A stretch of DNA of 64,000 bases, from the IMG/VR virus record IMGVR_UViG_3300023174_000040, positions 1 to 64,000 of that record. The stretch is one strand, 5' to 3'. The notes under the pieces are model-generated. The model was not told where the DNA came from and did not search any database. It saw only the letters and a list, made by a program, of their open reading frames with translations. Numbering within the stretch: the first letter of the stretch is position 1; each line of letters starts with the position of its first letter. Made by a program: the position numbers and the translations under genes. Below, piece by piece: positions 15,201 to 62,696 of this stretch.

Positions 15201-16428
15201 TTCTAAAATTAAGTTATTTGCTGAATATTACACGCAACAAGAAATAATTAATCTTCCAATATTTCATGGAAAAATATCAGGCTGTTCACCAGAGGATCCT
15301 TGGACTAGACCAACAACCACAACTCCTGCTCCGCAATCTTATTGTTCTATAAATAGTATAGAAGATATACCTAGTAGTTTATTTTTAAGTATAGATTGTG
15401 AATATGATGAAATAACCACCTCTATTCCAACCACAACAGTCTCTCCTTCTACTACGACAACTACTACTATTTCCCCAACAACAACAACGACAACAACAAT
15501 CTCTCCGTTATGTCTGCCGGAAATCCCACAGAACATAGCCATAGAATGTGTAAACCCGGGAGACACTTCCTCATCAGTATTGGCTTCAATTTCTTGGGAA
15601 TATCCAACTTATTTGTGTAATATACCTAACTGGATGACTGTTTATGTCATAGAGGCAATGTACAATGCCGAAGACCCAGGCTCTAATTGGGTTGAGAAAG
15701 ATTCATTTTTTGCAAGTCTTTATAGTGGCCCCAATCTGGGCACCATACCCAGGGTATCCCGCACTTTTCAAATAAGTAGAGCTCTAGGAGATCACCGATT
15801 TAGAGTTACTGCTGCCCTTATTCAGGTAGGCACTCTATGGGATCATAACACCTCTCGCTCTGTTATTACATCTACAATTAATTGGAATAATTGCGCTTTA
15901 TTAGCAACAAACACTCCTACTCCAACCCCGACTATTACCCCAACTAGGACTTTAACTCCCACCCCCACACAGGCACCAGCCCCAACCAATACTTCTACAT
16001 TAACTTCAACTCCAACAATCACAAAGACATCTACATCTACTTTAATAAATCCCGATTTAACACAAACGCCAACTTCAACTTTCACAAATACTCCAACCTT
16101 GACTCCAACTGGGACATCAACCCCAACCTTAACACCAACCTTAACACCAACCTTAACAAATACCACGACATCAAATAACCCGACTAACACACCAACTTTA
16201 ACAAGAACATCTACTAACACACCAACTTTAACAAGAACATCTACTAACACACCAACTTTAACAAGAACATCTACTAACACACCAACTTTAACAAGAACAT
16301 CTACTAACACACCAACTTTAACAAGAACATCTACTAACACACCAACTTTGACACCAACATTAACAAGAACTCAAACTCCATCTGCAGCAAATCCAAGTTT
16401 GAAAGTTCTCTGGGTTTCTTTCGTATAA
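12241..16428 (+). CDS. large mucin-like modular protein (Cys-rich, RCC1 repeats, LamG/ConA-like, beta-sandwich, Thr/Pro tails)
   Basis: LYAWGNNSNGQLGDGTT repeats; ELVFKP...IDFK...LVITRN LamG-like segment; long TLTPT stretches. Confidence 0.85.
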   Translation: MSKEIEKKLEKLDVTTTISPCASLPLGDSDVDCGAWCPDPLLNCCEWLAGPEAYARIQDPITSCYFGYTLGKMDCCHYGAGSVLIACDCPPIGSCSNEICIVVPPPGTTTTPPPVCFGLPDLSGYLVEAMYSDTDGPCPGGHACSRARFNLYVNNNWIMEVNLNNDCPVGRSNQVTGDKISSSVLPGGTVAEDGVFKFFLQCCCCTDVQGVDMLSSGPPAIAGNVATCTISTTTTTTTTTTTTTTTTTQGPCYFVIDDDFFGTGHWEGDCCWCRTTCIAGHPSNPICYKCPCCSPAGSSTAVFSEYQSCDDSRINCDPGPDNVCTTTIEPTTTTTTTTTTTTTTTGPGNCRHTGCHDGITWFRITSPEGEVVLSQCFVNDIITVLDSECTTTTSTTTTTIEPTPTLTETPGLTRTLTLTPTLTKTPTQTLVPCELYAWGNNSNGQLGDGTTINKYTPTFIGNFSKLSVGENHTHFLAIKSNGDLYAWGNNSNGQLGDGTTTDRSIPTKIGTDFIEVSGGTAESFAIKSNGDLYAWGNGGYAGSQLPIVPTKIGSEFSAVSCGEIGAVALKTNGDIYKISIDQIITGPIDSGFIKICAGEIDYVALKNDGNAYIGNLSNSQFYKAGSGGYIDISIHQLPFGIKSNGFIYLLQGPDTEALVFSDHNYKMIRGLENSSDGFLLLTNDGDIYSLSLGGVGRKIGSGFDYISAGDVSFYGLKCALSPPTLTRTLTPTPTLTLTFTSTPGLTNTLTSTPDLTKTLTSTPTLTFTPTLTKTPTLTKTLTSTPTLTKTLTSTLTLTPTLTPTPSATRWLTKTPTSTPTLTSTPTLTKTQTHTPTLTRSSGPNPTPTLTRTFGLTPTPTIMPCSCNMEEYTLELVFKPEPDNTTFGKLIDFKGKSSDNGIYIYDNGANLYISYIPGGYVGQTELEVNDYNQLVITRNKNTKNVCVFLNKIKQFEFTDTAGNVVLNDNIWLFVDDDITAVENIGNRVSKIKLFAEYYTQQEIINLPIFHGKISGCSPEDPWTRPTTTTPAPQSYCSINSIEDIPSSLFLSIDCEYDEITTSIPTTTVSPSTTTTTTISPTTTTTTTISPLCLPEIPQNIAIECVNPGDTSSSVLASISWEYPTYLCNIPNWMTVYVIEAMYNAEDPGSNWVEKDSFFASLYSGPNLGTIPRVSRTFQISRALGDHRFRVTAALIQVGTLWDHNTSRSVITSTINWNNCALLATNTPTPTPTITPTRTLTPTPTQAPAPTNTSTLTSTPTITKTSTSTLINPDLTQTPTSTFTNTPTLTPTGTSTPTLTPTLTPTLTNTTTSNNPTNTPTLTRTSTNTPTLTRTSTNTPTLTRTSTNTPTLTRTSTNTPTLTRTSTNTPTLTPTLTRTQTPSAANPSLKVLWVSFV
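16183..16349. repeat. 30-bp tandem repeat x5 plus a partial copy, encoding TNTPTLTRTS
   Basis: Perfect ACTAACACACCAACTTTAACAAGAACATCT units. Confidence 0.97.
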
Positions 16429-21297: not shown

Positions 21298-23103
21298 ATG
21301 GAAAACAACAAACAAATTATCGCTATGCTTGATGGAAAAGAAATCCGCATCTCCAAAGAAAGAAAATGCGGAGCCTCCTGTATGGCTAAAAATGATCCCC
21401 GCCTTATTGCAAATTTAAACCAAATTGAGGCATTAAGATCTAGGGGTCCGATAAGCTCAGATAGTGTTGTTACCATACCAATAGTTTTTAATGTAATATC
21501 TAATCCTAATTTACCTTGGACAAATATCACCGATGCAAAACTAAATGAACAGGTAAATCAGTTAAATTTAGATTATTCCGGAAACAACCCAGACGTTGTT
21601 AATTTACCTTGTGTTTTTGCTCCTTATTTACCAAGTGGAACAGGAATAAGATTTGAAATAAATCAAATAAGAAGAAAGGTCTCAAATACACTTATATTTT
21701 CGAAAGGCAACTTTTTTGGCAATTGGGCTCTTCAAGAAAGTATGAAGTATGAACCGGCCGGACTTAATCCGATATTAATACTTCCTAATAATATAAAGCC
21801 TCTTAATATATGGGTTTGTCTTTTTAATAATGATGGACTAATAAGCAGCGATCCGGATTTACTAGGATATAGTTATTTCCCCGATTTTCAGGATGGTTCA
21901 GCGGATTTTTTAAGAAATGATGGCGTGGTTGTCCAGCCATACTGCGTTGGAAGCAATAATAGTCCAACCTTTTTACCAAATGGCACTTCCAGCACGTTTG
22001 GTAGGGGTCGCACATTAACCCATGAAATTGGGCACTGGTTGGGTCTACGTCATACTTGGTTCGACGATGAGGTTAGGGACGCCCAAGGCAACCATCTCAG
22101 TTGGCTTTGTAATTCGAGTCCTGATGATATTCCGCCAAAAAAAGGTCCATCATATGGGTGTCCTTCCTTCCCTAATCTTTCTGGCCACCCCGTGGAGGGC
22201 TCTTGTTTTCCAAGCTCTCCAAACGGTGATCTCACCGTTGGTCTTGGTATAAGTAAATTTCCGCTTGTTGAAGGTTCTGGTACTTTATTCATGAATTACA
22301 TGGATTATGTAGATGATTCTTGTATGATTATGTTTACCAAATCCCAAAGAGACATAATGAGGGGTTTCCTTTCGACAAGGTTTAGGAAATCATCCATAAT
22401 CAGTGTGACTTCTCCATTCCCGAGCTCTATATCTGTGCCTTGTACACCTACTATTACACTGACCAAAACAATAAGGCCTACCAAGACGCCCACGCCCACT
22501 TGCACATCCACTCTAACATTAACTCCTACTCGCACATCCACTCCAACATTAACTAACACACTAACATTAACTAAAACTATCAGGCTCACAAAAACTCCTA
22601 CTCCAACTTTAACATCAACTCCAACATCAACACCTACTCCCACACCAACATTAACTAAAACTATCAGGCTCACAAAAACGCCTACTCCAACATCCACGCC
22701 TACTCCAACATCCACGCCTACTCCAACTCAAACATTAACAAGAACAATTAGAACTACAAGAACACTTACTCCGACTCCAACGTTGACACCAACCTCAACA
22801 AAAGGAAGTTTGCCTGGTACTCCAACTAATTTAATTGTGACATCAAACGGTGCCGGATCTGTTAGTATAGCTTGGGCTGTACCATTATCAGACGGCGGCA
22901 GAACAATAAATAGTTATATTATCAGATATACCCGTGACCAAGTTAATTATAGTTATAAAACAGTGGCATCTACAGGTATGATGAATGCAACAACAGTTTC
23001 AAGCTTAGTTGTGGGTTCAACATATACATTCAGGGTCGCAGCAATTAACTCTGAAGGACAAGGGGGATGGTCGACTGGTTTTCAATTTCTTGTTACCTCT
23101 TGA
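21298..23103 (+). CDS. M43 (pappalysin/ulilysin-like) zinc metalloprotease + Thr/Pro linker + FN3 domain
   Basis: [16 protein letters not shown]; MNYMDY Met-turn; PGTPTNL..W..PLSDGG..I..Y...[14 protein letters not shown]. Confidence 0.9.
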
Positions 23104-23189
23104 TATATTGGATATTCACATCCCTCATTACTTGTGACGTATCTTTTGTTGTTTTATAACAAAAAATCAACAAAAAACGTATATATTTT

Positions 23190-25091
23190 ATGGAAAACGA
23201 AAAAATCGTCCATATATCCGAGAACATCAGGAGATGTGGAGTAGACGAAATAATTAGGAGAGACCCCGCTCTCAGAAGAACCCTCAAAGCAGCTAATATT
23301 CACGCATTAGAAGTCACTCTCAGCTCAGATAGTGTTGTTACCATACCAATAGTTTTTAATGTAATATCTAATCCTAATTTACCTTGGACAAATGTTACTG
23401 ATGCAAAACTAAATGAACAAGTAAATCAGTTAAATTTAGATTATTCCGGAAACAACCCAGACGTTGTTGATTTACCTTGTGTTTTTGCTCCTTATTTACC
23501 AAGTGGAACAGGAATAAGATTTGAAATAAATCAAATAAGAAGAGCAAATTCAACCAAACTTTTCTCGGCTGGCGGAACTGGCGCTGATTGGATCCTTAAT
23601 GAAAGCATGAAATTTTCTAATCAAGGAGGAATAAATCCAATATTAACGCTTGCTAATGGTATAAAGCCTCTTAATATATGGGTTTGTTCTTATAATTCTG
23701 ATGGTAATCCATCAACTGGATATGACCTTTTAGGATATTCTTATTATCCTCATTACTCCATTTACGGCTCAAATTATGCGAGAAATGATGGTGTCGTGGC
23801 TATATCCTACAGTGTGGGCAGCCGCAATAGCCCAACAACTGACCCAAAAGGAAGAACATTTTTTGGTTTAGGTCGAACATTGACCCATGAAATTGGGCAC
23901 TGGTTGGGTCTTGCTCACACATGGAACGACAACGAGGTTACAGACGAGGCAGGTAAGCATATTCGATGGGTTTGTGACGCAAGTCCATTTGATTTGCCGC
24001 CTCAAAAAGGCTATTCATTTGAATGCCCTTCTTTCCCTAATTTCAATAACATAGAAGGTGGCTGTTTTCCGAGCAGCCCAGGTGGTGATCCCACCGATGG
24101 TCTTTACACGGGCCTCTTTCCACTTGTCGAGGGCTGTGGTAGTTTATACATGAATTATATGGATTATGTTGATGACTCTTGTATGATTATGTTTACCAAA
24201 TCCCAAAGGGATATAATGAGGGGTGTCCTCTCATCAGTGTATAGAAATAACTCAATAATCAGGACGACCTCTCCATTCCCGAGTGCCATATCTGTTAATC
24301 CTTGCACACCAACACTCACTAGAACAAATACTTCCACTCCCACCAAAACTTTAACTCCTACACCCACCAAAACGCCAACACTAACCCAAACCAAAACGCC
24401 TACCCAGACTCCAACAAAAACCCAGACTTTAACTATAACTCCCACATTAACTGGAACTCCAACATTAACCCCTACATTAACAAAAACCCCAACCTTAACC
24501 AGAACGATGCGAGTTTGGCCTGTACCTGGGACGACACGTGTAACGCAAACTCCAACATTAACCACCAATTCTCAAACCCCCACCCTGACCAGAACCCCAA
24601 CTTTAACCAATACTCCGACCCTAACTAGTTCTCAAACACCAACAAGGACTAGCACACCCACTCCCACTCCAACTAATACGCCCACCTCAACTTCTACTCC
24701 CACTCAAACATTAACCAAAACAATTAAGCTTACTAAAACCCCAACTTTAACACTTACGCCGACTCCAACATTAACACCAACCTCAACAAGAGGAGGCTTA
24801 CCTGGTACTCCAACGAATTTAATTGTGAGATCAAACGGTGCTGGGTCCGTTAGTATAACCTGGTCGGCACCACTATCAGATGGAGGCAGAATGATAAATA
24901 GTTATATTGTCAGATACACCCGTGACCAGGTCAATTATAATTTTAAAACAGTGGCATCTGGAGGTCTGATGAATGCAACAAATGTTTCAAGCTTAGTGTT
25001 AGGTTCAACTTATACATTCAGAGTTGCAGCAATTAACTCTGAAGGACAAGGGGCATACTCGACTGGTGCTCAATTTGTTGTGCCCTCTTGA
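23190..25091 (+). CDS. M43 zinc metalloprotease + Thr/Pro linker + FN3 (tandem paralogue)
   Basis: [22 protein letters not shown]; same architecture as the preceding gene. Confidence 0.9.
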   Translation: MENEKIVHISENIRRCGVDEIIRRDPALRRTLKAANIHALEVTLSSDSVVTIPIVFNVISNPNLPWTNVTDAKLNEQVNQLNLDYSGNNPDVVDLPCVFAPYLPSGTGIRFEINQIRRANSTKLFSAGGTGADWILNESMKFSNQGGINPILTLANGIKPLNIWVCSYNSDGNPSTGYDLLGYSYYPHYSIYGSNYARNDGVVAISYSVGSRNSPTTDPKGRTFFGLGRTLTHEIGHWLGLAHTWNDNEVTDEAGKHIRWVCDASPFDLPPQKGYSFECPSFPNFNNIEGGCFPSSPGGDPTDGLYTGLFPLVEGCGSLYMNYMDYVDDSCMIMFTKSQRDIMRGVLSSVYRNNSIIRTTSPFPSAISVNPCTPTLTRTNTSTPTKTLTPTPTKTPTLTQTKTPTQTPTKTQTLTITPTLTGTPTLTPTLTKTPTLTRTMRVWPVPGTTRVTQTPTLTTNSQTPTLTRTPTLTNTPTLTSSQTPTRTSTPTPTPTNTPTSTSTPTQTLTKTIKLTKTPTLTLTPTPTLTPTSTRGGLPGTPTNLIVRSNGAGSVSITWSAPLSDGGRMINSYIVRYTRDQVNYNFKTVASGGLMNATNVSSLVLGSTYTFRVAAINSEGQGAYSTGAQFVVPS

Positions 25092-39133: not shown

Positions 39134-40213
39134 ATGTACTATATTTTTACCGACAAAGAAAACAATCATCTTTTGAAGATCGAAAAGACTCGTGGAAGAA
39201 CCAAGAGTGGATTCACTCAGAAGTCGGATGGCAATTGGTATAAGATTGTTACGCCTGAAGAACTCAGAGTTATTGTAAATTCCAAAATTACAAATTTTGA
39301 GGAGATAGAAGGTGAATACGAAATCGGTGAACCCAAAGATGGTTCTTTTCAATCAAGGTTCTTGAGTGAAAGCAGGATCGAAGGTGGGGTATTTTATCCC
39401 AAACCCGATCCTTCTTATATCTCTGGGACAAATGTATCCAATCTATTTAAGAATTTGGATAAGCTCAGTGAGATATCCCCTCAGAATATTCGCTTAGTTG
39501 GTCCTCATGGTTGTGGTAAGACCGAATTGGCTATCCAATATGCGGCACAATATAATATGCCAATTCTTATTATGGATTGTGCTAATCTTCGTGAGCCAAG
39601 AGATTGGTTTGGTCATAAGACCGCTAAGGATGGCTCTGTATATTGGAAAGAAAGCCAGTTTGATAAGTGCATCACAAGTGGTGGCCATGTAATTCTTTTG
39701 GATGAAATCAATAGAACTTCTCCAAATGTTTTGAATACTTTGCTTCCATTATTGGACGATAGGAGATTCACCTATCTGGAAGAAAAGGGAGATATCATTA
39801 AGGTTGGCAAAAAGACAGTATTTTTTGCGACCATGAATGAAGGTGCAGGATATACAGGGGCGTCCAGTGTAGATTTTGCTCTTGAAGATAGATTCCCAAG
39901 ACTAATTGAGCTTAATTATCTCTTGAACAGCCAGGAAATCCAACTGCTCATTAGTAGGACTGGCATTGCAAAGTCTGATGCTAATAAGTTGGTGGATATA
40001 GCAACTACTATTAGGAAGAAAAATATGGGCCTTGATGCTTCGTTCTCCAAGAGCGTTAGCACAAGGCAGCTAATATCCATCGCACAGGATTTTGTTGTTG
40101 GTGGAGTTCCAACACTCGAATATACTTTGACCAATCATTTTAGCAGCGAAGGCGGCAGAGAGAGTGAACGAGCCGCAATCCTTCAAATGATTCAAGGAAA
40201 GTGGGGCAATTGA
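39134..40213 (+). CDS. MoxR/CbbQ/CobS-like AAA+ ATPase
   Basis: GPHGCGKT; ILLDEINR; FATMN.G.GY.G...D.AL.DRF; VSTRQL. Confidence 0.88.
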   Translation: MYYIFTDKENNHLLKIEKTRGRTKSGFTQKSDGNWYKIVTPEELRVIVNSKITNFEEIEGEYEIGEPKDGSFQSRFLSESRIEGGVFYPKPDPSYISGTNVSNLFKNLDKLSEISPQNIRLVGPHGCGKTELAIQYAAQYNMPILIMDCANLREPRDWFGHKTAKDGSVYWKESQFDKCITSGGHVILLDEINRTSPNVLNTLLPLLDDRRFTYLEEKGDIIKVGKKTVFFATMNEGAGYTGASSVDFALEDRFPRLIELNYLLNSQEIQLLISRTGIAKSDANKLVDIATTIRKKNMGLDASFSKSVSTRQLISIAQDFVVGGVPTLEYTLTNHFSSEGGRESERAAILQMIQGKWGN

Positions 40214-40214
40214 C

Positions 40215-42140
40215 ATGGCATTTAATTCTTCAGAATATAATGTGAATTATTCTCCCACTAGTATTTGGACAAAGAAATTAGGAATCTTTGATTATCAAGA
40301 AAAGACAGATAACAAGAACAAATGTTTGTCTCTGCTCAGGCAATTAAACAGATCCGCCAATATTATTTTGAATGATGGAGAAAATGAGAAGAATGTAAAA
40401 GTATCGTTTAGTAGTGGTGAAGAATCCAACAGTGTCTGTAAAAATGATATCTTCATTAGTCCTGATGATTTTCTTAATTCTAAGGATGAGTTCATAGTAG
40501 ATGCTCTTACCGGTAAAGTTTTATTGGCAACTCAACTTAAGAGATCTGTAGATAAAAATACTTGGAAAAAAGTTAAACTTGAGTCTAGGCTCGGCGGCAA
40601 GCGAAAGGGTTCCGATTTCGATTCTTGCAAGAATATTTGGCAGGCAATAGAGCAGTTCGTTGCAAGAGAAGAAGTAATTAAAAATTGGGAAGGCTTTGTT
40701 CCCTACTTTGTAAAACATTCAGAAAATTACATCTCAGAGAAGGACAAGATTCAAAGTCTATTGAATAAAACTTTCGACATAGATGGTTTTTCTTCTATGT
40801 TTGCTTGGAATATTCTTTTTTCTGAGAATTCACTAAAGATCCCCTTTCAGTATTCTGAATTATACGAAAAGTGCAAAAAACTTCTCGATATAGATAATTT
40901 GCCAGCCGATAAAAGGTGGGAATTTAGTAAAAAAGTTGTTGATATTGCTAAAGAATATTTCAAAGAAAATTCAAGTCACTCAGGTAATCAAGAATCCACA
41001 AAAGATTCAGATGAATCTAAGGAAGACTCAAACAACTCGGGTAATTCCGGTAATTCCGATCAAGAATCCACAGAAGATTCAGATGAATCTAAGGAAGACT
41101 CAAACAACTCGGGTAATTCCGGTAATTCCGATCAAGAATCCACAGAAGATTTAGACGAATCTAATGAGTCAGAATCGGAATTTGACAACTACAAAATAAC
41201 AGATAATGAACTTTTCGGAGATAAAGTTAAAAATAAAAGTTTTTCTGAGGCAAAAACTATTGATGTAGAAGCTCCTCAAGAAGAAGATTATGTTTGTCGT
41301 ATTTACGAGAATTGTGCCGAGCCGTTAGAGCCAAAATTTATTTTTAAAAATGAAAACAAGAAAAATCTATTGTTGAGAGAGAAGTATCTGAAAAAATTTA
41401 AGAAAGAAATTCAATCAATAAGCAAGTGTTTGCTTTTTAGAAATACAGATTCTTCTGTTGAAGATTATGGGCATGAGAATGGAGCCATAGATGAAAACAG
41501 TCTTCATAAGCTCGCCTATAACGACTATAGAATATATTCTGAAAAGACAATAAAATCTAAGAAAAATATTGCAATCTGTCTTTTAGTTGATGAAAGCGGC
41601 TCTATGATGGATAGACATAGAATAAATTTGGCAAAAGAGGTTGCTTTTGTTTTATCTGAGGCCATGAAATCTGTCAGCGGTTTGAAAGTCTGTATATATG
41701 GACATACCGCACAAACCGAAAACAACGAAGACATTGATATTACTTGCTACAAGACTTTTGATCAACAAGATACCTCAAGTATTTTTGAAATGAACGCCAA
41801 GCAGCAGAATCTTGATGGTCATGCCATTAAATATGTTGCGAAAAAATTTGCTGAGGATTCTTTTTCTTTTGATAAAAGAATTATGTTTATTATTTCCGAT
41901 GGAGAGCCAGAAGGATATGGCTATGGCGGAAGTCCTGCCATTAAGCACACCGGTAGTGTTTGTGAATTTTGTCGTAAAAAAATGTCTATTGACATAATCG
42001 GTATTGGTATCGACAATGCTTTTTCTACGACCACAGCCGAAAAACTATATGGAAAAAACAAAAGTATTGTTTTAGATGATGTCAAGAAGTCCCTGTCTGT
42101 TATGTCAAGATACATAAGACAGATAAGCCTTAGGATGTAA
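40215..42140 (+). CDS. VWA-domain partner (CobT/NorD-like)
   Basis: MIDAS LVDESGS; NLDGHAI; ISDGEP; adjacent to the MoxR-type ATPase. Confidence 0.85.
   Translation: MAFNSSEYNVNYSPTSIWTKKLGIFDYQEKTDNKNKCLSLLRQLNRSANIILNDGENEKNVKVSFSSGEESNSVCKNDIFISPDDFLNSKDEFIVDALTGKVLLATQLKRSVDKNTWKKVKLESRLGGKRKGSDFDSCKNIWQAIEQFVAREEVIKNWEGFVPYFVKHSENYISEKDKIQSLLNKTFDIDGFSSMFAWNILFSENSLKIPFQYSELYEKCKKLLDIDNLPADKRWEFSKKVVDIAKEYFKENSSHSGNQESTKDSDESKEDSNNSGNSGNSDQESTEDSDESKEDSNNSGNSGNSDQESTEDLDESNESESEFDNYKITDNELFGDKVKNKSFSEAKTIDVEAPQEEDYVCRIYENCAEPLEPKFIFKNENKKNLLLREKYLKKFKKEIQSISKCLLFRNTDSSVEDYGHENGAIDENSLHKLAYNDYRIYSEKTIKSKKNIAICLLVDESGSMMDRHRINLAKEVAFVLSEAMKSVSGLKVCIYGHTAQTENNEDIDITCYKTFDQQDTSSIFEMNAKQQNLDGHAIKYVAKKFAEDSFSFDKRIMFIISDGEPEGYGYGGSPAIKHTGSVCEFCRKKMSIDIIGIGIDNAFSTTTAEKLYGKNKSIVLDDVKKSLSVMSRYIRQISLRM
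40987..41149. repeat. 72-bp tandem repeat (about 2.3 copies) in the low-complexity linker of the VWA protein
   Basis: ATCAAGAATCCACA... at 40987, 41059 and 41131; unit QESTEDSDESKEDSNNSGNSGNSD. Confidence 0.9.
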
Positions 42141-42149
42141 AAAAAAAAC

Positions 42150-42177
42150 TTGACAACCTAAAAAATAAAAGTATATT
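42150..42177 (+). promoter_or_regulatory. sigma70-type promoter
   Basis: TTGACA-16-TATATT, then SD AGGAGG. Confidence 0.65.
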
Positions 42178-42225
42178 GTTCGACTTCGGTTTGTTTGTTT
42201 TCTTTTTTTCAATTAGGAGGTAATT

Positions 42226-42969
42226 ATGTCAAAGGACGGCAGAGGGCGAAAAGAACATGAACTAAAGAAGATGTGTCGTGAACGTGCGGAGGTTCGCAAT
42301 GCTCTCTTTGAATTGGCGTCTTCTATGAGACGAATGACTGATCTTGTTAGTCATCTCGTTTCTAATGGTATCAACGTTGAAGCCGAGATTATCAAGGTCA
42401 AGAGCATTAGTGTCCCCACCCTCACCAGCATTCTTGGCGAGCATGGGCACACTAGGCAGAAGGGTCGTCCCAAGGGGACTGGTAGCACTTCGTGGATCAA
42501 CAACCCACAGGCTATTAAGATCGTCGCAGATGTTCTCAGGAATCATGGACTTCACAAGGGTCGTGAGAAACTCCTTGAAGAAGGAATCGATTGTAAGAAC
42601 GAGAATGGTGAAAATGAACACTATTCATTTGTTGGCGATAATGGTAAGAAACTCTTGAGCATTACAACTCTAAGAGAAATTGCCAAAGATAATGGGATCA
42701 CCTTCGCAGTTGGTCCTAAATCGTCATCTTCTTCATCCTCTGTTGTTGAGGATCGTTATGACGAAGATGATGATGATGACGAAGATGATGAAGACGAAGA
42801 TGATGAAGACGAAGATGATGAAGACGATGATGATGATATCGAAGATGCCGAAGATGCAGAAGAAGATACCGAAGAAGATGATGAAGATATCGAAGAAGTC
42901 GAAGACGATGATGAAGACTTCGATGATGATATCGATGATTTTGAAGACGAGGATGAAGAGGACGAATAG
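42226..42969 (+). CDS. putative nucleic-acid-binding protein with AT-hook-like motif and 73-aa Asp/Glu tail
   Basis: KGRPKG; TLREIAKDNG; acidic tail encoded at 42748-42966. Confidence 0.8.
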   Translation: MSKDGRGRKEHELKKMCRERAEVRNALFELASSMRRMTDLVSHLVSNGINVEAEIIKVKSISVPTLTSILGEHGHTRQKGRPKGTGSTSWINNPQAIKIVADVLRNHGLHKGREKLLEEGIDCKNENGENEHYSFVGDNGKKLLSITTLREIAKDNGITFAVGPKSSSSSSSVVEDRYDEDDDDDEDDEDEDDEDEDDEDDDDDIEDAEDAEEDTEEDDEDIEEVEDDDEDFDDDIDDFEDEDEEDE

Positions 42970-43012: not shown

Positions 43013-43024
43013 TCCATCTTGTTG

Positions 43025-43073
43025 GTTTCTCCCTCCTTCCTGTGTAAAAATGGGAAGGGGGGAGAAACTTTTT
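43025..43073 (+). terminator. long-stem intrinsic terminator
   Basis: 17-bp stem GTTTCTCCCTCCTTCCT/GGGAAGGGGGGAGAAAC (two G-U pairs) followed by T5. Confidence 0.85.
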
Positions 43074-43085
43074 TGAAAGGCATTT

Positions 43086-45686: not shown

Positions 45687-46082
45687 ATGACTGATAGTGT
45701 TGAAAATACTGAGAAAGCCCCCAAGGTCAATAAGACCAGCATAATCCGTGATCTTATTGCCAAGAATCCTTCGGCAAAGCCCGCTGAAATTGTCAAGGAA
45801 CTTGCAGAGAAGGGTATTGAAGTCACCAGTACCTTCGTTTCTGTAACTAAGAGCAGGATGAAGAACCCTATCCCCAAGAAATCAAAGGTGATGGCCGCTG
45901 GAAAGCGCCGTCGCAAGGTTTCTCCTAAGAAGGGTTTTTCTGCAAAGAAGAGCCGTGGACATAATCGTTACAGCAATCAGCCTGTAATTGAGCATATGCT
46001 CCTTGTCAAGGGTCTTATGGAAAAGATGTCTGTTGAGGATATTGTTTCTGCTGCAAACGCACTTAAGAAGTTGTCTTATTGA
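45687..46082 (+). CDS. Lys-rich histone/nucleoid-like protein of a Planctomycete-type family
   Basis: NKTSIIRDLIAKNPSAKPAEIVKELAEKGIEVTSTFVSVTKS + basic linker + C-terminal helices. Confidence 0.65.
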   Translation: MTDSVENTEKAPKVNKTSIIRDLIAKNPSAKPAEIVKELAEKGIEVTSTFVSVTKSRMKNPIPKKSKVMAAGKRRRKVSPKKGFSAKKSRGHNRYSNQPVIEHMLLVKGLMEKMSVEDIVSAANALKKLSY

Positions 46083-46185: not shown

Positions 46186-47004
46186 ATGGATGTAATGGTT
46201 GTTGACAATAAGGCTAATGTTGATATTGAGCCTGCAAGTAAATCTCAAACATACTACTTGTTCCTGCTCACTGGCTTGGATTCAAGAAATTGCAATCTAA
46301 GTAAAAAAGAATGTTTCGAATTGATTGCCTTATGGAAAGGCAATAAAAGAGAAGATCAAGAATTTGTTTATGATTTCTTGATTACAAAAAATGCGGTTGT
46401 TCGTCGTAAAAAGAGTTTTCCAAAAAATAACACAAAGAAGGGCGCTATTATGAATAAGTTTAGTCGTAAAGAAACTTACGAGAGAATTGACGGTCTTGTT
46501 AACGCAAAGAAGAGTTGGGATTATATTGTTAAGATCTTGAACAAAGAAGGTCATGCAACTAATCGAATTAGTGTTGGCAAATGGACCGTTAAAGGTTCGT
46601 ACGATTTTTATCGTAGAACTCAGCCTGAGCGTCCCACCGGAGTCAGAAAGGTTCAGCAGGAACGAAGGCTTGAAATGTGTGAACTGCTCAATAGCGGCAA
46701 GACAATCAAAGAAATTGCTGCCCAATTTAATATTTGCGATGTGGCTGTGCGTAGTGCGATTAAAACCGCCCTGCGTAAGAATGAAGCTGTCATAGACGCC
46801 AAATATAGTTTTGGTAAGAATGCAAAGCGGAGTAGGAGCAAGAACAAGAACAAGAAAGTTCTGACCCAGAAAACTGTTTTAAAGCCCAGTTTTCCCGCTT
46901 TTGCCATTTCAGAAATGAAGTCTGTATTGGATAGCATTCTTGATTCCAATATGGACAACAGTTCTAAACTGGCCATCATTAAAACTGTGTTGAGTCAAAA
47001 GTAA
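46186..47004 (+). CDS. multi-HTH DNA-binding protein (putative regulator)
   Basis: SGKTIKEIAAQFNICDVAVRSAI HTH; LNKEGH.T...G.W recombinase-type HTH; basic tail. Confidence 0.65.
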   Translation: MDVMVVDNKANVDIEPASKSQTYYLFLLTGLDSRNCNLSKKECFELIALWKGNKREDQEFVYDFLITKNAVVRRKKSFPKNNTKKGAIMNKFSRKETYERIDGLVNAKKSWDYIVKILNKEGHATNRISVGKWTVKGSYDFYRRTQPERPTGVRKVQQERRLEMCELLNSGKTIKEIAAQFNICDVAVRSAIKTALRKNEAVIDAKYSFGKNAKRSRSKNKNKKVLTQKTVLKPSFPAFAISEMKSVLDSILDSNMDNSSKLAIIKTVLSQK

Positions 47005-56688: not shown

Positions 56689-57849
56689 ATGCAAGACGAT
56701 GCAGTTCCAACTACAACTCCATTATTTACCGTAGGAAGCGAAGTTTATTCTTTGCTTCAAGAGAAAAATGGTTATTTAGAAAAAGTTGTAATTAAAAAAA
56801 TAATATACAATCCAGAAAATCAATCTTATCTTTATAAAGATACTTGGAATGGTATTTATTTTGAGGAAGATTTGCGTGAGATACAATCCCCAACCCCAAC
56901 ATTAACACCCACTTTAACGCTAACAAAAACCCCAACATCCACTCCAACAAAAACCAATACTCCGACTAGCACTAGGACCCCAACATCCACTCCAACAAAA
57001 ACAAAAACCAATACTCCGACTAGCACTAGGACCCCAACATCCACTCCAACAAAAACCAATACTCCGACTATTACTAGGACCCCTCTTCCCACACAAACAT
57101 CAACTCTTGCCCCAACCCCAACCTGTACTTCAACGCCCACATTGACTCTTACTCTAACGCCCACACTGACATCAACATCCACTCTAACACCAACACCTAC
57201 ACTCACTTCGAATACAATAATTCCAAGCTGTAACTCAATTACTTTGGTGGGCATCAATGCGGACACAACAGGAAATTCTGCGACGAAAACATCTGCTGGT
57301 GGTTGGGATTCATCATCGTATTCCGTTGAAACTTATTCAGAACCAGTCTCAGTAACATTCCAGGCTTCAACTAACGGAAATTATTTTATGGGTGGATTTT
57401 CTTATAATCCAACTACAAATACTCAGACTTATATAAATACAACCTATGGATTTTATATACAAAATGGATTTTTAGAGATATACGAATATGGAGGCCAAGT
57501 TAATGTCCCCGGCTCTACCATCACATTATCCACCGATGTTTGGAAGGTAGATTATAATGGAACAAATGTTGAATATTATAAAAATAATAATTTAATTTAT
57601 ACCTCATTAAATCCAATAACACAACCACTGCACGTTTTCTTTGCACTTTTGACTGGGGGGCAAGGCGTCACTAATATTTGTGTCAGATCAACAAACACTC
57701 CAAAACCGACGCCAACAAATACACCTACCAATACACTTGTTATGCTTTCTTATGAAAGAAGCTCAGATGCCCCAATCAGCACAGATCAAAATTGGGGTTT
57801 ATTAAGATCAGTCATACCAAACAACATACAAGGGTGGGGCGAATCATGA
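56689..57849 (+). CDS. Thr/Pro-linker protein with a ConA/SPRY-like C-terminal domain
   Basis: About 115-aa T-x repeat; beta-rich domain [13 protein letters not shown]...KVDYNG.NVEYYKN. Confidence 0.75.
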
Positions 57850-60800
57850 AAAAATATACCATAGTTTTAAAAAACATTTCCGAAAAAGAACAATTTCAAT
57901 CTGAGCTGAGAGGGGTTTCATCACTAGAGTATATCCCCAATAGAGAGTGTAATATCGAAAATATTGAATATTCAAGATGTTTACTTTCGGAATTAACTGA
58001 TGAGGAGGCTGTTCTATTAAAGAACGATAATAGAGTTAGTGCTATAAAAATGACAGCACCAACTATTTTAAAACCAGCTGTATTTACTTCCGAAAGTCTA
58101 TTGCCATCAAAAATATTATTTAAATCACAATCAAATACAGATAATATTAAAATACAATCACTATCTCAGCAAGCAAATATAGAAAATATTCCTGATGGTA
58201 ATGGTGTTGACGTTGTTATTGTGGATGGAATAATTACAGGAAAATCAAGAAATGAAAGTTTGATTTTTGATGACGAGGACATACACCCAGAATTATTGGA
58301 TATAAACGGTAATTCTAGAGTAGAATTGATAAATTGGAATGCATATGTTAATAAACCAAGGTCATATCCATATAAAGCTATTTTAGAATTTCCTCCTGAA
58401 AAAGATAATAATCTTCATGGACTACACGTTGCCGGAACAGCATGTGGTGCAACATTAGGGTGGGCAAAAAATAGTAAAATATATAATATTTCTCCTTATG
58501 CAGGCCCACTTGGTTATCAATACCTATCAGCCGTAACAAATTGGCATTTATCAAAAGGAAATTCTAGGCCAACAATTACCAATCATAGCTATGGTGTTAG
58601 TTATCCTCTTTATGAGGCTAGATATATTACTAAAATTATAGCTGGCGGGGTGGAATACATTGCCCCAAGAGAAACAGAACAAGCTGTAGCGGAGGCTGTG
58701 ATCAACCAAAATGGTCAAATTGAATCATTTAATATTATTAATTCGGGTGCTGGTTATACTAATAATCCGGACATATCATATAATGGTGGTGGTGGAGATG
58801 AAGCCGCAATAATAATGGCTAGTGGAACAGTAAAAGAGATAACAGTTACTAATATAGGATCTGGATACAATCAAAATAGCCCACCAAATATTATATTTTC
58901 TCAGCCCTTGGCAGGAGTAGCAGCATCTGGAACGTGTACGGTTAACTCTAATGGGAATATCGATAGTATTAAAATAACAGAATGGGGTAGTGGATACGAT
59001 CAGCCACCAACTATAACTTTTGATGACCCTGCTTCTGGGACAACAGCAACAGCAACAGCAATAATTGGCTCTAATTTTATTAAATCCATACAAATACTAA
59101 ATAGTGCTCCTGGCTTTGGGAGAAATGGCACTAAAATATATGCTGATCCTCCGTTTATTATATTCAGCGGAGGAAATTGTATTAAAGATGCATTGTGGAC
59201 AATTTCAAATGATAATGGAGAATATAATACTTATTGTGGGCTAGGCGAACCAAACGACTATTCGAGGATTGTTACTGGTCTATATGTTATAGCTACAAAA
59301 AAGACTAATATTGATTCAATTAGTTTTAAATATACTTTACTAGGAGGGGAATATGGTTCGGTACCGAATGTGTCGTTTAGATACCAAGGCCCTTCCTTGG
59401 AGGGAACGTCGGGTCCAATAGCCAGGACAACAGTAGATGAAGGTCAAGTTTCTAGCATAATACCATCATGGTCGGAGGATGTCTCGGTGAACGACTCATC
59501 TTACGGATGGTTTACTTCTCCACCACAAATTTATATAACAAATGGTGGTGGATTTAGTGAAGAAGTTTTAGATAATTGGGGAATCCTTCTTTATAAGGTA
59601 TCAATTCCAGGCAATCCAGCAGCGGGGTTATTTTTTCCTACTTATATTTACCCGGCTCCTGCCAGAGACATAGTTATGGATTCATTACTAGAGGATATGA
59701 TAGAGGCGGGTGTTGTAGTTGTTGCAGCTGCGGGGAATAGTTTCTATGATATACGAATTCCTACCTCTGGTAATTATGATTTAACCATAGAGGCAAATTT
59801 ATGCAATCTACAAAAATCAAATCCATCAATTCCATATGACGACAGCATAACAGAAGATATTATAACCCCAGGAGGCAATTATACTGCTCTGTATCGTGGA
59901 CAGTTGTGGGGGGATAATATCTATGATTTTTTTCCATTTCAAGGAAGCAGTCCAGGATCAGCTAGTGGAGTCATTACTGTTGGTTCTATGTCTTATGAAT
60001 GCTGTCCTGAGATTAAATCTTTATTTAGCAATTCAGGAAAAAGAATAGACATATATGCTCCTGGCGGTCAAATCTTATCATCAGCTTTTTTTAATGCTGA
60101 GTCATTTGGTGGCAGTTTTTTTTGCGATCATCCAAAGGATAATAGATTTGGTATGTCAAAATTAAGCGGAACAAGTATGGCTAGTCCTCAAGTTTGTGGA
60201 GCAATAGCCAGCTATTTAACAGAAGGCAACATACAGAGATCAGAGAATATAGTAGAGCAAGCCACGCAATGGATCAAAGATAATGGTATACCAACATTAT
60301 CTAACGGAGCTTTTCCATATAATCTTCATGACGGGACAAATAAAATTTTGTATTTTCCCAACATTATAGTAAATGTTTCAACAACTGCGATTGCTCCAAC
60401 GTTAACACCTACTTCTACACCAACCCCCACACCAACCAATCAAGATGTTCCTACGACTTTGCCTCCATATCCAACTAATACTCCAACTTTAACAAATACT
60501 CCAACTTTAACAAATACACCAACTCTAACAAATACACCAACTCTAACATCACCAGAGCCAATGCTAGTTACCGATGGATTGGTATTGCACTATGACTTCA
60601 GCAATCCACTCAGTTATTCCGGAAATGGCTCCAATATAGTTGATTTATCAAATTCCAACAATAATGGAACCCTTATAAATAATTATGCTGCGGCTATATC
60701 TTGGGTTAATGATGGTGACAAAAGTTATTTTAATTGGTCAACAAATGATGGTGGAAGTGGGAGTAACTCATTTGGAGGTTGTATACAAACAACCTCAACT

Positions 60801-62696
60801 AATACCTATAAAGATTTTACCATTGTATTTCAACCGGATTTTAGCACCTCTGGAATAGTAGGTCTATTTTGTATTCCAAATGATAAAAGTTTAAGATTTT
60901 ATAATGGAAATACTTGGGTGATACCAAATCCCGGTAACGGTGATGATTGGGCAGGATCACCAACAACATATTATGTAAACGGGCAAGTGAGCAATACAAT
61001 GCTATCTGGATGGAATATTTTTGGCGGAGCAAAGAACAATAACAATCCAGCTTTCCCCGACAATGCCAGGCTATATATTGGCACAAGCGGTTATCAAGAC
61101 CGTCATATGCAAGGTAAGATTGCTGTGGTATTGATGTATAATAGAGTTTTAACACATCAAGAGCAAATACAAAACTATAATTTCTTAAAAACAAGATTCG
61201 ATCAGATCTCAAATCCGACTCCCACACCAACCAATACACCAACACCTACACCAACGCAGACGCCCGAAAATGGAAATCCATATAAATTTGATCAACCTAA
61301 AATTTTTGATATTATCCCAATAAACACCACGAGTTTAGATAAAAATGTGGCTTCAACAGGAAGAGAACCAGTAAAAATAGAAGATAATTATAAAATATAC
61401 ATATTTGAAAAATTAAATAATTATAAAGCTGATTCAGGAGGGGGACATACTTCCGTTCAATCTACAATATTCTTTTTATCTGTAAAAGGACATAATATAA
61501 GAGGTCCATTAACTATTGATTTCTGTTCTGGAGATGGAGATGAAGACAATAATTTATTTGAGATAAGCGGTCCTTATTATAATGACTTTTCATACACCGG
61601 ATCTACTGTTGCAATACTTGTCAAAGAGGATTTGATTTACGAAAATAAATCCGAATATAATATAAGAATTAGAGCTGGTTCTTGTGGTTGGGACGAATGT
61701 TATTCTTTTGAAAAATTATTTAAAATAATTTTAGTAAAAGTCAATCCAGAAAACATTGAACTTAAAACTGATATGGTTATATTTTTAGATAATCCTTGGA
61801 GGGATAATAGACTTCCTTTGTCCTCAAATCTGTATACAGTCTTTAATTATGAAAATTCAATTAAAAAAATTGATGCTTATTCTAATATAGAGTTTGCCTC
61901 CGGTGTTGGCGATGATGATAATTATAGATTCTTGCTTAGTAAAGGAACATTCACAGACTATGTTAGTGGCTTGTCCAATATTTGGTGTAATTGTTATACC
62001 AGTTGTTATACTCTCATATGTTATAACACAGAAGGTTTATCAGATGGAGATGTAATAAGCATAAGAATTAAATTATATAATCAGGACAGAACTTATGGTA
62101 ATTCTTACGCAAGCAGTTGTGATTCTTTTTTACAATATTCTACTTTATTAAGCCCAACACAGCCAAGAGCAGAGTATGTAGAAAAGATACTAAATATTCC
62201 TGTTTATCAATCAACAAGCATACCCAGAACAGACAGTGTGACAGACTTTAGTTTAGTTGCTAATACTTTAGATGCGTCATATCCAGAATATTTATATTTG
62301 TGGATTATTCATCCAAAAGAATATATGTTTTTAGATGAAAATATATATATTAGAATAGAATATACAAAAAACAATGGTTTAAATTGGAATTTTTTAATTG
62401 ACGCCTATTCTTCTGGGGGATGGCACAGCTTCATCAACTATGGTTGGGTATTTTTTGATTTAAAATCACAAATATTTTATACTCAATATGAACGTGCATC
62501 ATCACAGGAAAATCATAATTCTCCAATAAGTTATTGTGATACTGTTCAGTTTAGATGCGCCACAGTAGACAAAAGTGGAGAGGTCGAATCTTTATCTAAT
62601 TGGACTTATTCAAATGTTTTTTCTACTTTAAGCCGTTTTGGAGAAGACTGTTCCAATCAAGTTGAATCTAAAAGCCTATACATCTCTTTTGACTAA
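57846..62696 (+). CDS. S8 subtilisin-like protease with internal insert, Thr/Pro linkers, LamG and cadherin-like domains (start revised to 57846)
   Basis: [28 protein letters not shown]; [12 protein letters not shown] LamG-type start; ATGA overlap. Confidence 0.9.

What the first reader, a model, noticed from the sequence alone, without database searches (positions are those of the whole stretch)
42226..42969. AT-hook-like plus 73-residue acidic tail protein with its own strong expression signals
It has a dedicated TTGACA promoter, an AGGAGG SD and visibly higher GC than flanking genes. A basic region with KGRPKG is followed by an almost pure Asp/Glu tail. The architecture resembles HMGA-like CarD of Myxococcus or RNAP delta-type acidic tails. 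It may be an early takeover factor, DNA mimic or nucleoid chaperone, possibly paired with the basic protein at 45687.
Basis: inference. Interest (0 to 1): 0.6.

Follow-up and report, generated by a model that had tools for sequence, protein, structure and literature searches.

The report
Phage DNA-binder with polyacidic tail
A freshwater jumbo phage carries a strongly signalled single-gene unit for a protein with two small DNA-binding modules, each led by a short Gly-Arg arm, and an 85% Asp/Glu disordered tail; it belongs to a new, very narrow family that most likely acts as a DNA-anchored polyanion in host takeover, but nothing has been tested at the bench.

Summary
ORF 42226-42969 (+, 247 aa) has a near-consensus sigma70-type promoter, an AGGAGG ribosome-binding site, a strong terminator and a 73-residue tail that is 85% Asp/Glu. 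It lies in a 323 kb freshwater jumbo-phage record.

What is new:
- Promoter type, 16-nt spacer and gene insulation recur in three homologous loci, down to 39% protein identity.
- The family is tiny: 7 representatives among 1.84 billion proteins, all phage-like metagenomic contigs. It has no Pfam, PHROG or NCBIfam match.
- Residues 1-166 are an internal duplication of a helix-turn-helix-related module. Each copy follows a basic Gly-Arg arm (RGRK 6-9; KGRPKG 79-84, invariant GRP, in a disordered linker).
- A 92-aa relative is one such module flanked by RGRGRP and RGRPK.
- The tail (net -61) is predicted disordered. It carries a conserved motif, [FY]DD[DE][ILV]xD[FLI], which matches the first six residues of the E. 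coli SSB tip DFDDDIPF.

It is not a member of the CarD, HMGA, RNAP delta, HMGB or SPO1 Gp44 families. It resembles delta, Gp44 and HMGB1 in architecture only.

Most likely (about 0.4) it is an early, abundant, DNA-anchored polyanion that competes with DNA for basic surfaces. The pairing with ORF 45687 is weakly supported. I rate it a new variant of a known kind, of moderate interest.

The parts
42138..42177 (+). Sigma70-type promoter: A-run (UP-like), -35 TTGACA at 42150-42155, 16-nt spacer, -10 TATATT at 42172-42177
   Evidence: 11 of 12, best site in 9 kb. The same type with a 16-nt spacer stands before the homologues in L002, L004 and L006. Function as a promoter is inferred, not measured.
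42215..42220 (+). Shine-Dalgarno AGGAGG, 5 nt before the ATG
   Evidence: The 5' leader is not more structured than shuffles.
42226..42969 (+). CDS, 247 aa (P0001), stop codon included
   Evidence: 17 homologues at 49-98% identity. Four of four population variants within residues 1-166 are synonymous third-position changes (codons read).
42241..42252 (+). Basic arm 1, R6-G7-R8-K9, invariant in the family, just before module 1
   Evidence: invariant columns. pLDDT is low for residues 1-6.
42259..42453 (+). Module 1 (residues 12-76): helices, short hairpin, then a helix beginning ISVPTL; related to helix-turn-helix domains
   Evidence: AF2 pLDDT 82-92. hhalign to an HTH_23/HTH_7 unit of P0023: 91%, E 9e-7. 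Structural neighbours are mostly HTH DNA-binding domains but weak, Z 4.7 or less.
42460..42477 (+). K79-G-R-P-K-G84: AT-hook-like arm in the disordered linker between the modules; G80, R81 and P82 are invariant
   Evidence: pLDDT below 50 for residues 78-87. The equivalent place in P0022 is RGRGRP.
42490..42705 (+). Module 2 (residues 89-160): duplicate of module 1 with a longer hairpin insert; last helix begins LSITTL
   Evidence: hhalign of module 1 against module 2: 70.6%, P 3.9e-5. hhalign to the single-module protein P0022: 97%, E 5e-11. AF2 pLDDT 80-91.
42721..42741 (+). Run of seven Ser (S166-S172), hinge between the folded part and the tail
   Evidence: pLDDT below 50.
42748..42966 (+). 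Polyacidic tail E175-E247: 73 aa, 62 D or E, one basic residue; predicted disordered; encoded by imperfect GAT/GAA/GAC repeats
   Evidence: composition, net -61 for residues 167-247. (pLDDT 35-50). (periods 3, 9 and 15). Assemblies from other samples break here.
42916..42942 (+). Conserved tail motif DFDDDIDDF (residues 231-239), 8 residues from the C-terminus
   Evidence: [FY]DD[DE][ILV]xD[FLI] occurs in 15 of 19 full-length members, 7-13 residues from the end, and at the very end in P0020. pLDDT is slightly higher at 231-240.
43024..43075 (+). Intrinsic-terminator-like hairpin (20-bp stem, 9 G-C pairs) plus T-run
   Evidence: (z -4.2). Hairpin plus T-run also follow the homologues in L002 and L004.

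Best explanation
This is a real, separately transcribed gene of a freshwater jumbo phage, and I read the protein as a DNA-anchored polyanion.

Expression (inferred). Host RNA polymerase reads the gene from a near-consensus sigma70-type promoter, so it is probably early and abundant.

DNA binding (inferred from sequence and model). The N-terminal 166 residues (net +7, pI 9.5) bind double-stranded DNA. They do so through two duplicated helix-turn-helix-related modules. Each module is preceded by a flexible Gly-Arg arm (RGRK; KGRPKG) that should lie in the minor groove of A/T-rich DNA. The layout recalls the bipartite paired-like domains of Tc1/mariner transposases, where an AT hook joins two HTH subdomains.

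The tail (inferred by analogy). The disordered tail (net -61) competes with DNA for basic surfaces in two ways:
- Within the molecule it folds back on the DNA-binding part. This weakens and speeds up its binding, as D/E repeats do in HMGB1.
- Between molecules it occupies DNA-binding clefts of host proteins. The most likely targets are the RNA polymerase channel or nucleoid proteins, as the acidic regions of Bacillus delta and SPO1 Gp44 do.

The conserved motif near the tail's end is the likely specific docking element.

Shown here: the gene, its signals and their conservation, the family, the duplication, the charge pattern and the predicted disorder. Inferred: DNA binding, timing of expression and the target of the tail.
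For: Signals and their conservation.

Promoter class: neighbouring genes carry a different, phage-specific upstream motif, whereas this gene carries the host-type promoter.

No RNA polymerase, sigma70 region 2, SSB or HU was found in the 323 kb record. The phage therefore probably depends on host polymerase.

Family and selection. Four of four population variants are synonymous.

Fold and module links:
- Two confident small domains joined by a disordered GRP linker.
- Internal duplication.
- Link to HTH_23/HTH_7 units.
- The single-module relative with AT hooks on both sides.
- Structural neighbours dominated by HTH DNA-binding domains, including the Sin resolvase DBD, the SETMAR DBD, small-terminase HTH and the Pax8 paired box.

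Charge.

Precedents from papers:
- SPO1 Gp44 has a folded DNA-binding part plus a disordered region that is 57% D/E and binds RNAP beta and beta' (PMC8208478).
- The delta CTR has net charge -47 (PMC7749165).
- D/E repeats autoinhibit DNA-binding proteins and speed their target search (PMC10250230).
- Sleeping Beauty transposase has PAI, a GRRR AT hook and RED (PMC7827188).
Against: - No expression data exist: no RNA run holds the stretch.
- No direct Pfam HTH or AT_hook match for the protein.
- Structural matches are weak (Z 4.7 or less; Foldseek E above 0.1), at a level the tool itself calls common.
- AF2 draws a short hairpin where a canonical HTH has its second helix.
- There is no homology to Gp44 (hhalign 1.1%) or to delta.
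- The host is unknown.
- A phage that relies on host polymerase throughout would have to escape its own inhibitor.
- The record is only 64% complete by CheckV's estimate, so a phage polymerase could lie in the missing part.
Confidence: 0.4

Rival explanations
1. It is an architectural protein for the phage's own DNA, like HMGB1 or HMGA. It coats or bends A/T-rich phage DNA during replication, transcription or packaging. The tail only tunes its own binding through autoinhibition and fast exchange, and has no host target.
For: Two DNA-binding modules plus a D/E tail is the HMGB1 layout (PMC10250230). The strong signals imply abundance. The genome is 64% A+T, which suits minor-groove arms. No HU was found in the record.
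Against: A charge of -61 against +7 is far more than autoinhibition needs. A conserved hydrophobic-acidic motif near the tail's end suggests a specific partner. There is no HMG box or HU fold.
Confidence: 0.25
2. It is a sequence-specific transcription activator of the phage's own promoter class. The two modules read the roughly 18-nt motif GTTTCnTTYYGGTACGGT that precedes most neighbouring genes. The acidic tail with its F-x3-I-x2-F motif contacts host RNA polymerase, like an acidic activation domain or like T4 MotA.
For: The motif occurs 63 times against 8 expected, 62 of them on the + strand, mostly upstream of ORFs. It is also present in L002 and L004. This gene is not driven by the motif in the window but by a host-type promoter, as expected of an early activator. 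No phage polymerase or sigma was found.
Against: There is no evidence that the protein binds the motif. ORF 46186, with a sigma70 region-4-like HTH, is at least as good a candidate. In L004 the motif lies in this gene's own leader. The motif is not shown to be a promoter.
Confidence: 0.12
3. It is an acidic chaperone or partner of basic phage proteins. Candidates are the Lys/Arg-rich ORF 45687 or DNA-condensing or virion proteins, which it would keep soluble or off the DNA until needed.
For: ORF 45687 has a K/R-rich centre and its own TTGACA promoter at 45619. Its orthologues sit in the same conserved gene block in L002 and L004.
Against: The genes are 2.7-4 kb apart, not adjacent. The orthologues are much less basic, and no TTGACA-type promoter stands upstream of them. 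A chaperone would not need a bipartite DNA-binding part.
Confidence: 0.08
4. It is a decoy or recruiter that imitates the SSB C-terminal tip. The motif DFDDDI... would bind host proteins that normally dock on SSB, either sequestering them or bringing them to the DNA that the protein is bound to.
For: The first six residues of the motif are identical to the E. coli SSB tip DFDDDIPF (PMC3936761). The motif is conserved in 15 of 19 members although the rest of the tail is not alignable. In P0020 it ends the protein with Phe. No OB-fold SSB was found in the record.
Against: In 18 of 19 members the motif is followed by 7-13 more acidic residues. By my own knowledge of SSB-partner structures, the free carboxylate of the last Phe is important. 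The spacing of the hydrophobic residues is one residue longer than in SSB. In a tail that is 85% D/E, partial identity is easy to reach by chance.
Confidence: 0.07

Closest known systems
Bacillus phage SPO1 Gp44 (early host-takeover protein; PMC8208478)
   Same: Both are phage proteins of similar size (237 against 247 aa). Both have a small folded DNA-binding part and a disordered region made mostly of Asp/Glu with almost no basic residues. Both genes stand alone behind an intergenic gap in a block of early-type genes. The paper reports that Gp44 anchors to DNA and binds RNAP beta and beta'.
   Different: No detectable homology: hhalign 1.1% and tblastn against 50,697 phage records finds nothing. 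In Gp44 the acidic region is central (residues 56-122, 57% D/E) and is followed by a further domain. Here it is C-terminal, 85% D/E, and ends in a conserved motif. The DNA-binding part here is bipartite, with Gly-Arg arms.
RNA polymerase delta subunit (RpoE) of Bacillota (PMC7749165)
   Same: A folded N-terminal helical domain plus an intrinsically disordered polyacidic C-terminal region of similar length (delta CTR 83 aa, net -47; here 81 aa, net -61).
   Different: No HARE-HTH match. The N-terminal part here is duplicated, basic and carries GRP arms, so it is probably a DNA binder rather than an RNAP-docking domain. This is a phage gene, and the host is unknown.
HMGB1 (two HMG boxes plus a D/E tail; PMC10250230)
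   Same: Two small helical DNA-binding domains, a basic linker and a C-terminal D/E repeat. Autoinhibition through the tail is the documented mechanism.
   Different: No HMG box. The tail here is more than twice as long (by my own knowledge the HMGB1 tail is about 30 residues). HMGB1 is eukaryotic, this protein is from a phage.
HMGA proteins and Myxococcus CarD
   Same: A GRP-core basic element combined with an acidic region.
   Different: Only one GRP and one RGRK, both attached to folded modules. No Pfam AT_hook match and no CarD_TRCF domain. The order of the parts differs: by my own knowledge CarD has the acidic region before its AT hooks.
Paired-like bipartite DNA-binding domains (Sleeping Beauty PAI, GRRR AT hook, RED, PMC7827188; Pax paired box) and HTH_7/HTH_23 domains of serine recombinases and transposases
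   Same: Two helix-turn-helix subdomains joined by a flexible basic Gly-Arg linker. There is a profile link to HTH_23/HTH_7 units of P0023. Weak structural matches to the Sin resolvase DBD, the SETMAR DBD and the Pax8 paired box.
   Different: No catalytic domain and no direct Pfam match. The AF2 model shows a hairpin where the second HTH helix would be. A polyacidic tail is not part of those families.
C-terminal tip of bacterial SSB, DFDDDIPF (PMC3936761)
   Same: DFDDDI is identical. It lies at the end of a long disordered acidic segment attached to a DNA-binding domain. The SSB tip also folds back on its own DNA-binding site.
   Different: No OB fold. The motif is subterminal in 18 of 19 members. 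The hydrophobic spacing is one residue longer.

Membership tests
HMGA / AT-hook proteins (PF02178) | R-G-R-P core flanked by basic residues, recognised by the AT_hook model, usually in several copies in a disordered protein | tested here: inconclusive
   G80-R81-P82 are invariant and lie in a disordered linker. However, the residue before them is K, R, Q or N, there is only one GRP plus one RGRK, and no AT_hook match appears at E up to 10. The relative P0022 has RGRGRP with a sub-threshold AT_hook match (E 0.048).
Myxococcus CarD | N-terminal CarD_TRCF RNA-polymerase-interacting domain | tested here: not met
   No such Pfam match in P0001 or in any of 13 family members at E up to 10.
RNA polymerase delta subunit (RpoE) | N-terminal HARE-HTH domain | tested here: not met
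   No HARE-HTH match, and no NCBIfam match.
RNA polymerase delta subunit (RpoE) | Long disordered polyacidic C-terminal region | tested here: met
   Residues 167-247 have net charge -61 and pLDDT 35-50. Delta has -47 (PMC7749165).
RNA polymerase delta subunit (RpoE) | Binds RNA polymerase | not testable with these tools
   Needs a pull-down or two-hybrid test with the (unknown) host's polymerase.
SPO1 Gp44 family | Sequence homology to Gp44 | tested here: not met
   hhalign of the family profile against Gp44 gives 1.1%, with only a 14-residue similarity. tblastn against the phage collection finds no match.
SPO1 Gp44 family | Folded DNA-binding part plus a disordered acidic 'DNA-mimic' region, expressed early from host-type promoters | tested here: inconclusive
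   The architecture and promoter type fit. DNA binding, timing and RNAP binding are not measured.
HMGB proteins | HMG-box fold | tested here: not met
   No HMG_box Pfam match, and no HMG-box entry among the structural matches listed.
HTH_23 / HTH_7 (homeodomain-like, resolvase-type) helix-turn-helix superfamily | Tri-helical HTH recognised by the family profiles | tested here: inconclusive
   The link is indirect. The family profile finds the poly-HTH protein P0023 (E 1.4e-4 in 1.84 billion proteins; hhalign 91%, E 9e-7). The matched part of P0023 is an HTH_23/HTH_7 unit. There is no direct Pfam match, and AF2 shows a hairpin at the place of helix 2.
Paired-like bipartite DNA-binding domain (PAI, linker, RED) | Two HTH subdomains joined by a basic minor-groove linker | tested here: inconclusive
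   The layout is met. The Foldseek match to the Pax8 paired box has E 1.3, and the SETMAR DBD scores Z 3.3, neither significant.
Bacterial SSB | OB-fold ssDNA-binding domain (PF00436) | tested here: not met
   No PF00436 match anywhere in the 323 kb record or in the protein.
Bacterial SSB | Acidic tip motif at the extreme C-terminus, ending in Phe | tested here: not met
   The motif is present but lies 7-13 residues from the end in 14 members. It is terminal only in P0020.

The most novel reading that the evidence does not exclude
The tail motif would be a phage-made, dsDNA-tethered imitation of the SSB C-terminal tip. The protein would sit on duplex DNA through its Gly-Arg arms and HTH modules and present dozens of acidic residues ending in DFDDDI-x-x-F. 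In this way it would capture or redirect the host proteins that normally dock on SSB (replication-restart, recombination and repair enzymes). That would be a takeover route not described for any phage.
Probability: 0.07. Interest if true: 0.75.

Novelty: new variant of a known kind. Interest (0 to 1): 0.5.

Why it matters
Disordered polyacidic regions attached to DNA-binding domains are known from a handful of studied proteins: HMGB1, RNAP delta and SPO1 Gp44. How they act is under active study. This family adds an extreme natural case (85% D/E, net -61). It has a simple, duplicated DNA-binding part, a conserved docking motif, and strong, conserved expression signals in uncultured freshwater jumbo phages.

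If the tail targets host RNA polymerase or nucleoid proteins, it would be a new host-takeover factor. It would also be a compact tool: a DNA anchor joined to a polyanion.

If the protein reads the phage's GGTACGGT motif, it would explain how this phage clade switches transcription without a polymerase of its own.

All of this can be tested directly with the recombinant protein.

Tried and rejected
Searches that found nothing useful for the protein:
- Pfam, PHROGs and NCBIfam scans. The only Pfam hit (PPP4R2, below threshold) falls on the acidic tail and is compositional.
- tblastn against 50,697 phage records, and megablast of 10 kb of context.
- An IMG/VR pattern scan.
- The ESM Atlas search by features: no usable hit.
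- PDB sequence searches with three profiles: only chance-level hits such as OmpC and L22.

Fold searches:
- Foldseek against PDB and BFVD gave nothing at E 0.001 or better.
- The Atlas shape search gave TM 0.32 or less by the query (0.34 or less by the match).
- VIA-align over 48,161 chains reached at most Z 4.7. I use this only as a theme (HTH DNA-binding domains), not as proof.

Rejected readings:
- Small terminase, suggested by repeated weak matches to the G20c and P74-26 small-terminase N-terminal HTH. I rejected it because of the early-type promoter, the acidic tail and the lack of an oligomerisation domain.
- SPO1 Gp44 homology.
- Paralogues of the module elsewhere in the genome: none found.

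Expression: no RNA run holds the stretch.
- The one read-laying run used DNA contigs only. It shows presence in other freshwater samples, synonymous variants, and assembly breaks in the repeat that encodes the tail. It gives no information on tail-length variation.

Not run: complex prediction. I do not claim a specific protein pair, and a fuzzy electrostatic complex would not be judged fairly by it.

Host identification failed:
- There are no tRNAs in the window.
- The nearest ligase relatives among isolated phages are only 32-36% identical.
Full report
**Where the window lies.** The window is the first 64 kb of a 323,267-bp IMG/VR virus record. CheckV estimates the record as 64% complete.
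- The DNA is 35.8% G+C.
- The stretch around the finding occurs in lake and freshwater metagenomes from at least 14 studies. None of these is an RNA run.
- No isolated phage is close. There is no DNA match, and the neighbouring ATP-dependent ligase is at most 36% identical to ligases of Bacillus and Geobacillus phages.
- The record holds no match to RNA polymerase families, sigma70 region 2, OB-fold SSB or HU. A third of the genome may be missing.

**The observation.** ORF 42226-42969 (+) gives 247 residues.
- A -35 TTGACA (42150-42155), a 16-nt spacer and a -10 TATATT (42172-42177) form the best sigma70-type match (11 of 12) among 40 sites in 9 kb. An A-run lies directly upstream.
- AGGAGG lies 5 nt before the ATG, in a leader no more structured than shuffled sequence.
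- A hairpin with a 20-bp stem and a T-run follows at 43024-43075 (z -4.2).
- G+C is 0.467 in the first 450 nt, against 0.29-0.36 in the flanks. The gene ranks 38th of 440 ORFs. GC3 of the N-terminal part is in the top 6%.
- KGRPKG is residues 79-84. E175-E247 is 73 residues with 62 Asp or Glu.
The only correction is that a second folded module and a run of seven Ser separate KGRPKG from the tail.

**Are the signals more than chance?**
- TTGACA alone is not enriched in the genome. Complete -35/-10 matches are about threefold enriched in non-coding DNA (17 of 70 in 8.5% of the sequence).
- The same arrangement precedes the homologous gene in three other contigs. These carry proteins that are 39-53% identical overall (49-52% over the first 172 residues). 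The arrangement is an A/T tract, TTGAC(A/T), exactly 16 nt, then TAT(A/G)(T/A)T (L002, L004, L006).
- In L002 and L004 a terminator hairpin closes the gene before, and another follows the acidic gene.
- The unit is therefore a conserved, insulated, single-gene transcription unit with a host-type promoter.
- The G+C excess is not conserved in the homologues.

**A second promoter-like class sets the gene apart.** While checking promoters I found a phage-specific motif with consensus aGTTTCnTTYYGGTACGGTtg.
- Its core occurs 63 times in the genome, against 8 expected. 62 copies are on the + strand, and 35 lie in the 8.5% non-coding DNA, mostly 10-120 nt before ORF starts.
- The window has 8 copies, against 0.66 expected.
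- The motif precedes the neighbouring genes at 39134, 43086, 45314, 47914 and 52670, but not 42226.
- Related contigs carry it as well.
- If it marks the phage's own (middle or late) promoters, the acidic-tail gene belongs to the small class read by unmodified host polymerase. This fits early expression but does not prove it.

**The family.**
- A word-based search over 5.8 billion proteins found 17 relatives (49-98% identity over the first 172 residues). All have the 163-177-residue N-terminal part and an acidic tail of 68-131 residues.
- An exhaustive profile search of 1.84 billion cluster representatives found only seven, so the family is very narrow.
- Synteny is conserved. An AAA+ ATPase gene lies upstream, directly followed by a CobT-like vWA gene in the window and in the P0006 contigs. 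A roughly 123-aa ORF, an M42-like peptidase and an ATP-dependent DNA ligase lie downstream.
- In contigs from other lakes, the four differences inside the N-terminal part (42408, 42414, 42594, 42642) are all synonymous third-position changes (codons read).

**The N-terminal 166 residues.** AlphaFold2 on the family alignment gives two confident small domains (residues 12-76 and 89-160, pLDDT 80-92). They are joined by a disordered linker (78-87) that holds the invariant G80-R81-P82.
- The two domains are duplicates of each other (hhalign 70.6%, P 3.9e-5). Each ends in a helix that starts (I/L)S-x-(P/T)-T-L.
- Each is preceded by an invariant basic Gly-Arg element: R6-G-R-K9 and K79-G-R-P-K83.
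- Two remote hits explain the module:
  - P0022 (92 aa, from another phage-like contig) is a single module flanked by RGRGRP and RGRPK (hhalign 97%, E 5e-11).
  - P0023 (635 aa) is a string of HTH_23/HTH_7 units. One of them, followed by HRGKP, aligns with module 1 and its KGRP (hhalign 91%, E 9e-7).
- Structural neighbours are weak (Z 4.7 or less) but are mostly HTH DNA-binding domains: Myb/SANT, Zeste, GcrA, Fis/NtrC, ArgR, the Sin resolvase DBD, the SETMAR DBD, small-terminase HTH and the Pax8 paired box.
- I read the region as a bipartite HTH-related DNA-binding domain with minor-groove arms. The layout is that of paired-like domains, in which an AT hook joins two HTH subdomains (PMC7827188).
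- Open point: the model shows a short hairpin where a canonical HTH has helix 2, and no Pfam HTH model matches directly.

**The tail.**
- Residues 167-247 carry 62 acidic residues and one basic one (net -61). Residues 1-166 carry +7, with pI 9.5.
- The full-length model leaves the tail disordered (pLDDT 35-50).
- The DNA that encodes it is an imperfect GAT/GAA/GAC repeat, and short-read assemblies break there.
- Across the family the tail cannot be aligned, except for its last part. There, [FY]DD[DE][ILV]xD[FLI] occurs in 15 of 19 members, 7-13 residues from the end. In the most distant member, P0020, it ends the protein.
- In this protein the motif reads DFDDDIDDF. Its first six residues equal those of the E. 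coli SSB tip DFDDDIPF, which binds both SSB's own DNA site and its partner proteins (PMC3936761).

**How it most likely works.** The sequence shows a basic, bipartite DNA binder tied to a very long polyanion. Three studied systems show what such tails do:
- In HMGB1, D/E repeats fold back on the DNA-binding domains and can speed target search (PMC10250230).
- In Bacillus RNAP delta, a -47 tail follows the folded N-terminal domain that docks the subunit on the polymerase (PMC7749165).
- In SPO1 Gp44, an early takeover protein, a folded DNA-binding part anchors a disordered acidic region that binds RNAP beta and beta' and stops host growth (PMC8208478).

The present protein is not homologous to any of these. 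I therefore propose the same kind of mechanism, not membership. The protein would be made early and in quantity, bind DNA through its arms and modules, and offer its tail as a DNA-like competitor. The tail would act both on its own binding surface and on host DNA-binding proteins, with the motif as the specific contact. Confidence is about 0.4.

The rivals are:
- a purely architectural role on phage DNA (0.25);
- an activator that reads the GGTACGGT motif (0.12);
- an SSB-tip decoy (0.07).

**The proposed partner at 45687.** This 131-aa protein has a weak ArgR-like winged-helix match and a Lys/Arg-rich centre. It has a TTGACA-type promoter at 45619. Orthologues (34-36% identity) lie in the same block in L002 and L004. 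However, the orthologues are far less basic, no comparable promoter precedes them, and the two genes are kilobases apart. The two genes co-occur in this clade. That is all that can be said.

**Verdict.** The finding is a new, narrow protein family that is a new variant of a known kind: a DNA-binding domain with a polyacidic disordered tail. The function is inferred from architecture and analogy only. Interest is moderate (0.5).

Noticed in passing
window 33629, 38882, 39022, 39073, 43005, 45298, 47865, 52627 (start of the GGTACGGT core); whole record G000:C1: Phage-specific motif of about 18 nt, aGTTTCnTTYYGGTACGGTtg. It occurs 63 times in 323 kb (8 expected), 62 of them on the + strand, mostly just upstream of ORFs, often right after a terminator hairpin. 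There is a dense cluster at 168-184 kb. It is also present in the related contigs L002-L004. It is probably the phage's own promoter class, or another transcript-start or processing signal.
   Followed up: partly
G000:C1:276264-276680 (-), outside the window: A second extremely acidic ORF: 138 aa, 67% Asp/Glu, with interspersed Tyr and Trp (EWYK repeats). It has no folded N-terminal part like the one studied here.
   Followed up: no
window 45687-46082 (+): A 131-aa protein with a weak ArgR-like winged-helix match, a Lys/Arg-rich centre and its own TTGACA promoter at 45619. Orthologues lie in L002 (12007-12339) and L004 (12875-13195).
   Followed up: partly
window 46186-47004 (+): A 272-aa protein with weak matches to sigma70 region 4, LuxR and resolvase-type HTH. 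It is a candidate regulator of the phage-specific promoter class in a record where no sigma or RNA polymerase was found.
   Followed up: no
window 39134-42140 (+): A CobS/MoxR-like AAA+ ATPase followed by a CobT-like vWA protein. The vWA protein contains a duplicated Ser/Asp/Glu/Asn-rich insert (a repeated 'ESTKDSDESKEDSNNSGNSGNSDQ'-like unit). The pair is conserved directly upstream of the acidic-tail gene in the closer relatives.
   Followed up: no
window 6455-10915 and 12241-16428 (+); 57792-62696 (+); 21298-25091 (+): Very large phage ORFs (1486 and 1395 aa) with many RCC1 repeats, a 1634-aa protein with a subtilase domain, and two tandem paralogues with M43-peptidase-like and fibronectin type III parts.
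   Followed up: no
L007:3286-3564 (P0022): A 92-aa protein from a different phage-like contig that is one copy of the module, flanked by RGRGRP and RGRPK, with no acidic tail. The module plus AT hooks therefore exists as a free-standing small DNA-binding protein.
   Followed up: partly
window 42139: Contigs from two other freshwater samples lack one base at 42139, within the stop codon (42138-42140) of the vWA gene where the A-run before the -35 element begins. This may be a length polymorphism of the UP-like tract or an assembly error at low depth.
   Followed up: no
contigs carrying P0006 (no DNA held): In one relative an IS605 OrfB/TnpB-like gene (Cas12f1-like TNB domain) lies beside the UvdE gene downstream of the ligase. 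In a second contig the two appear fused or differently called.
   Followed up: no
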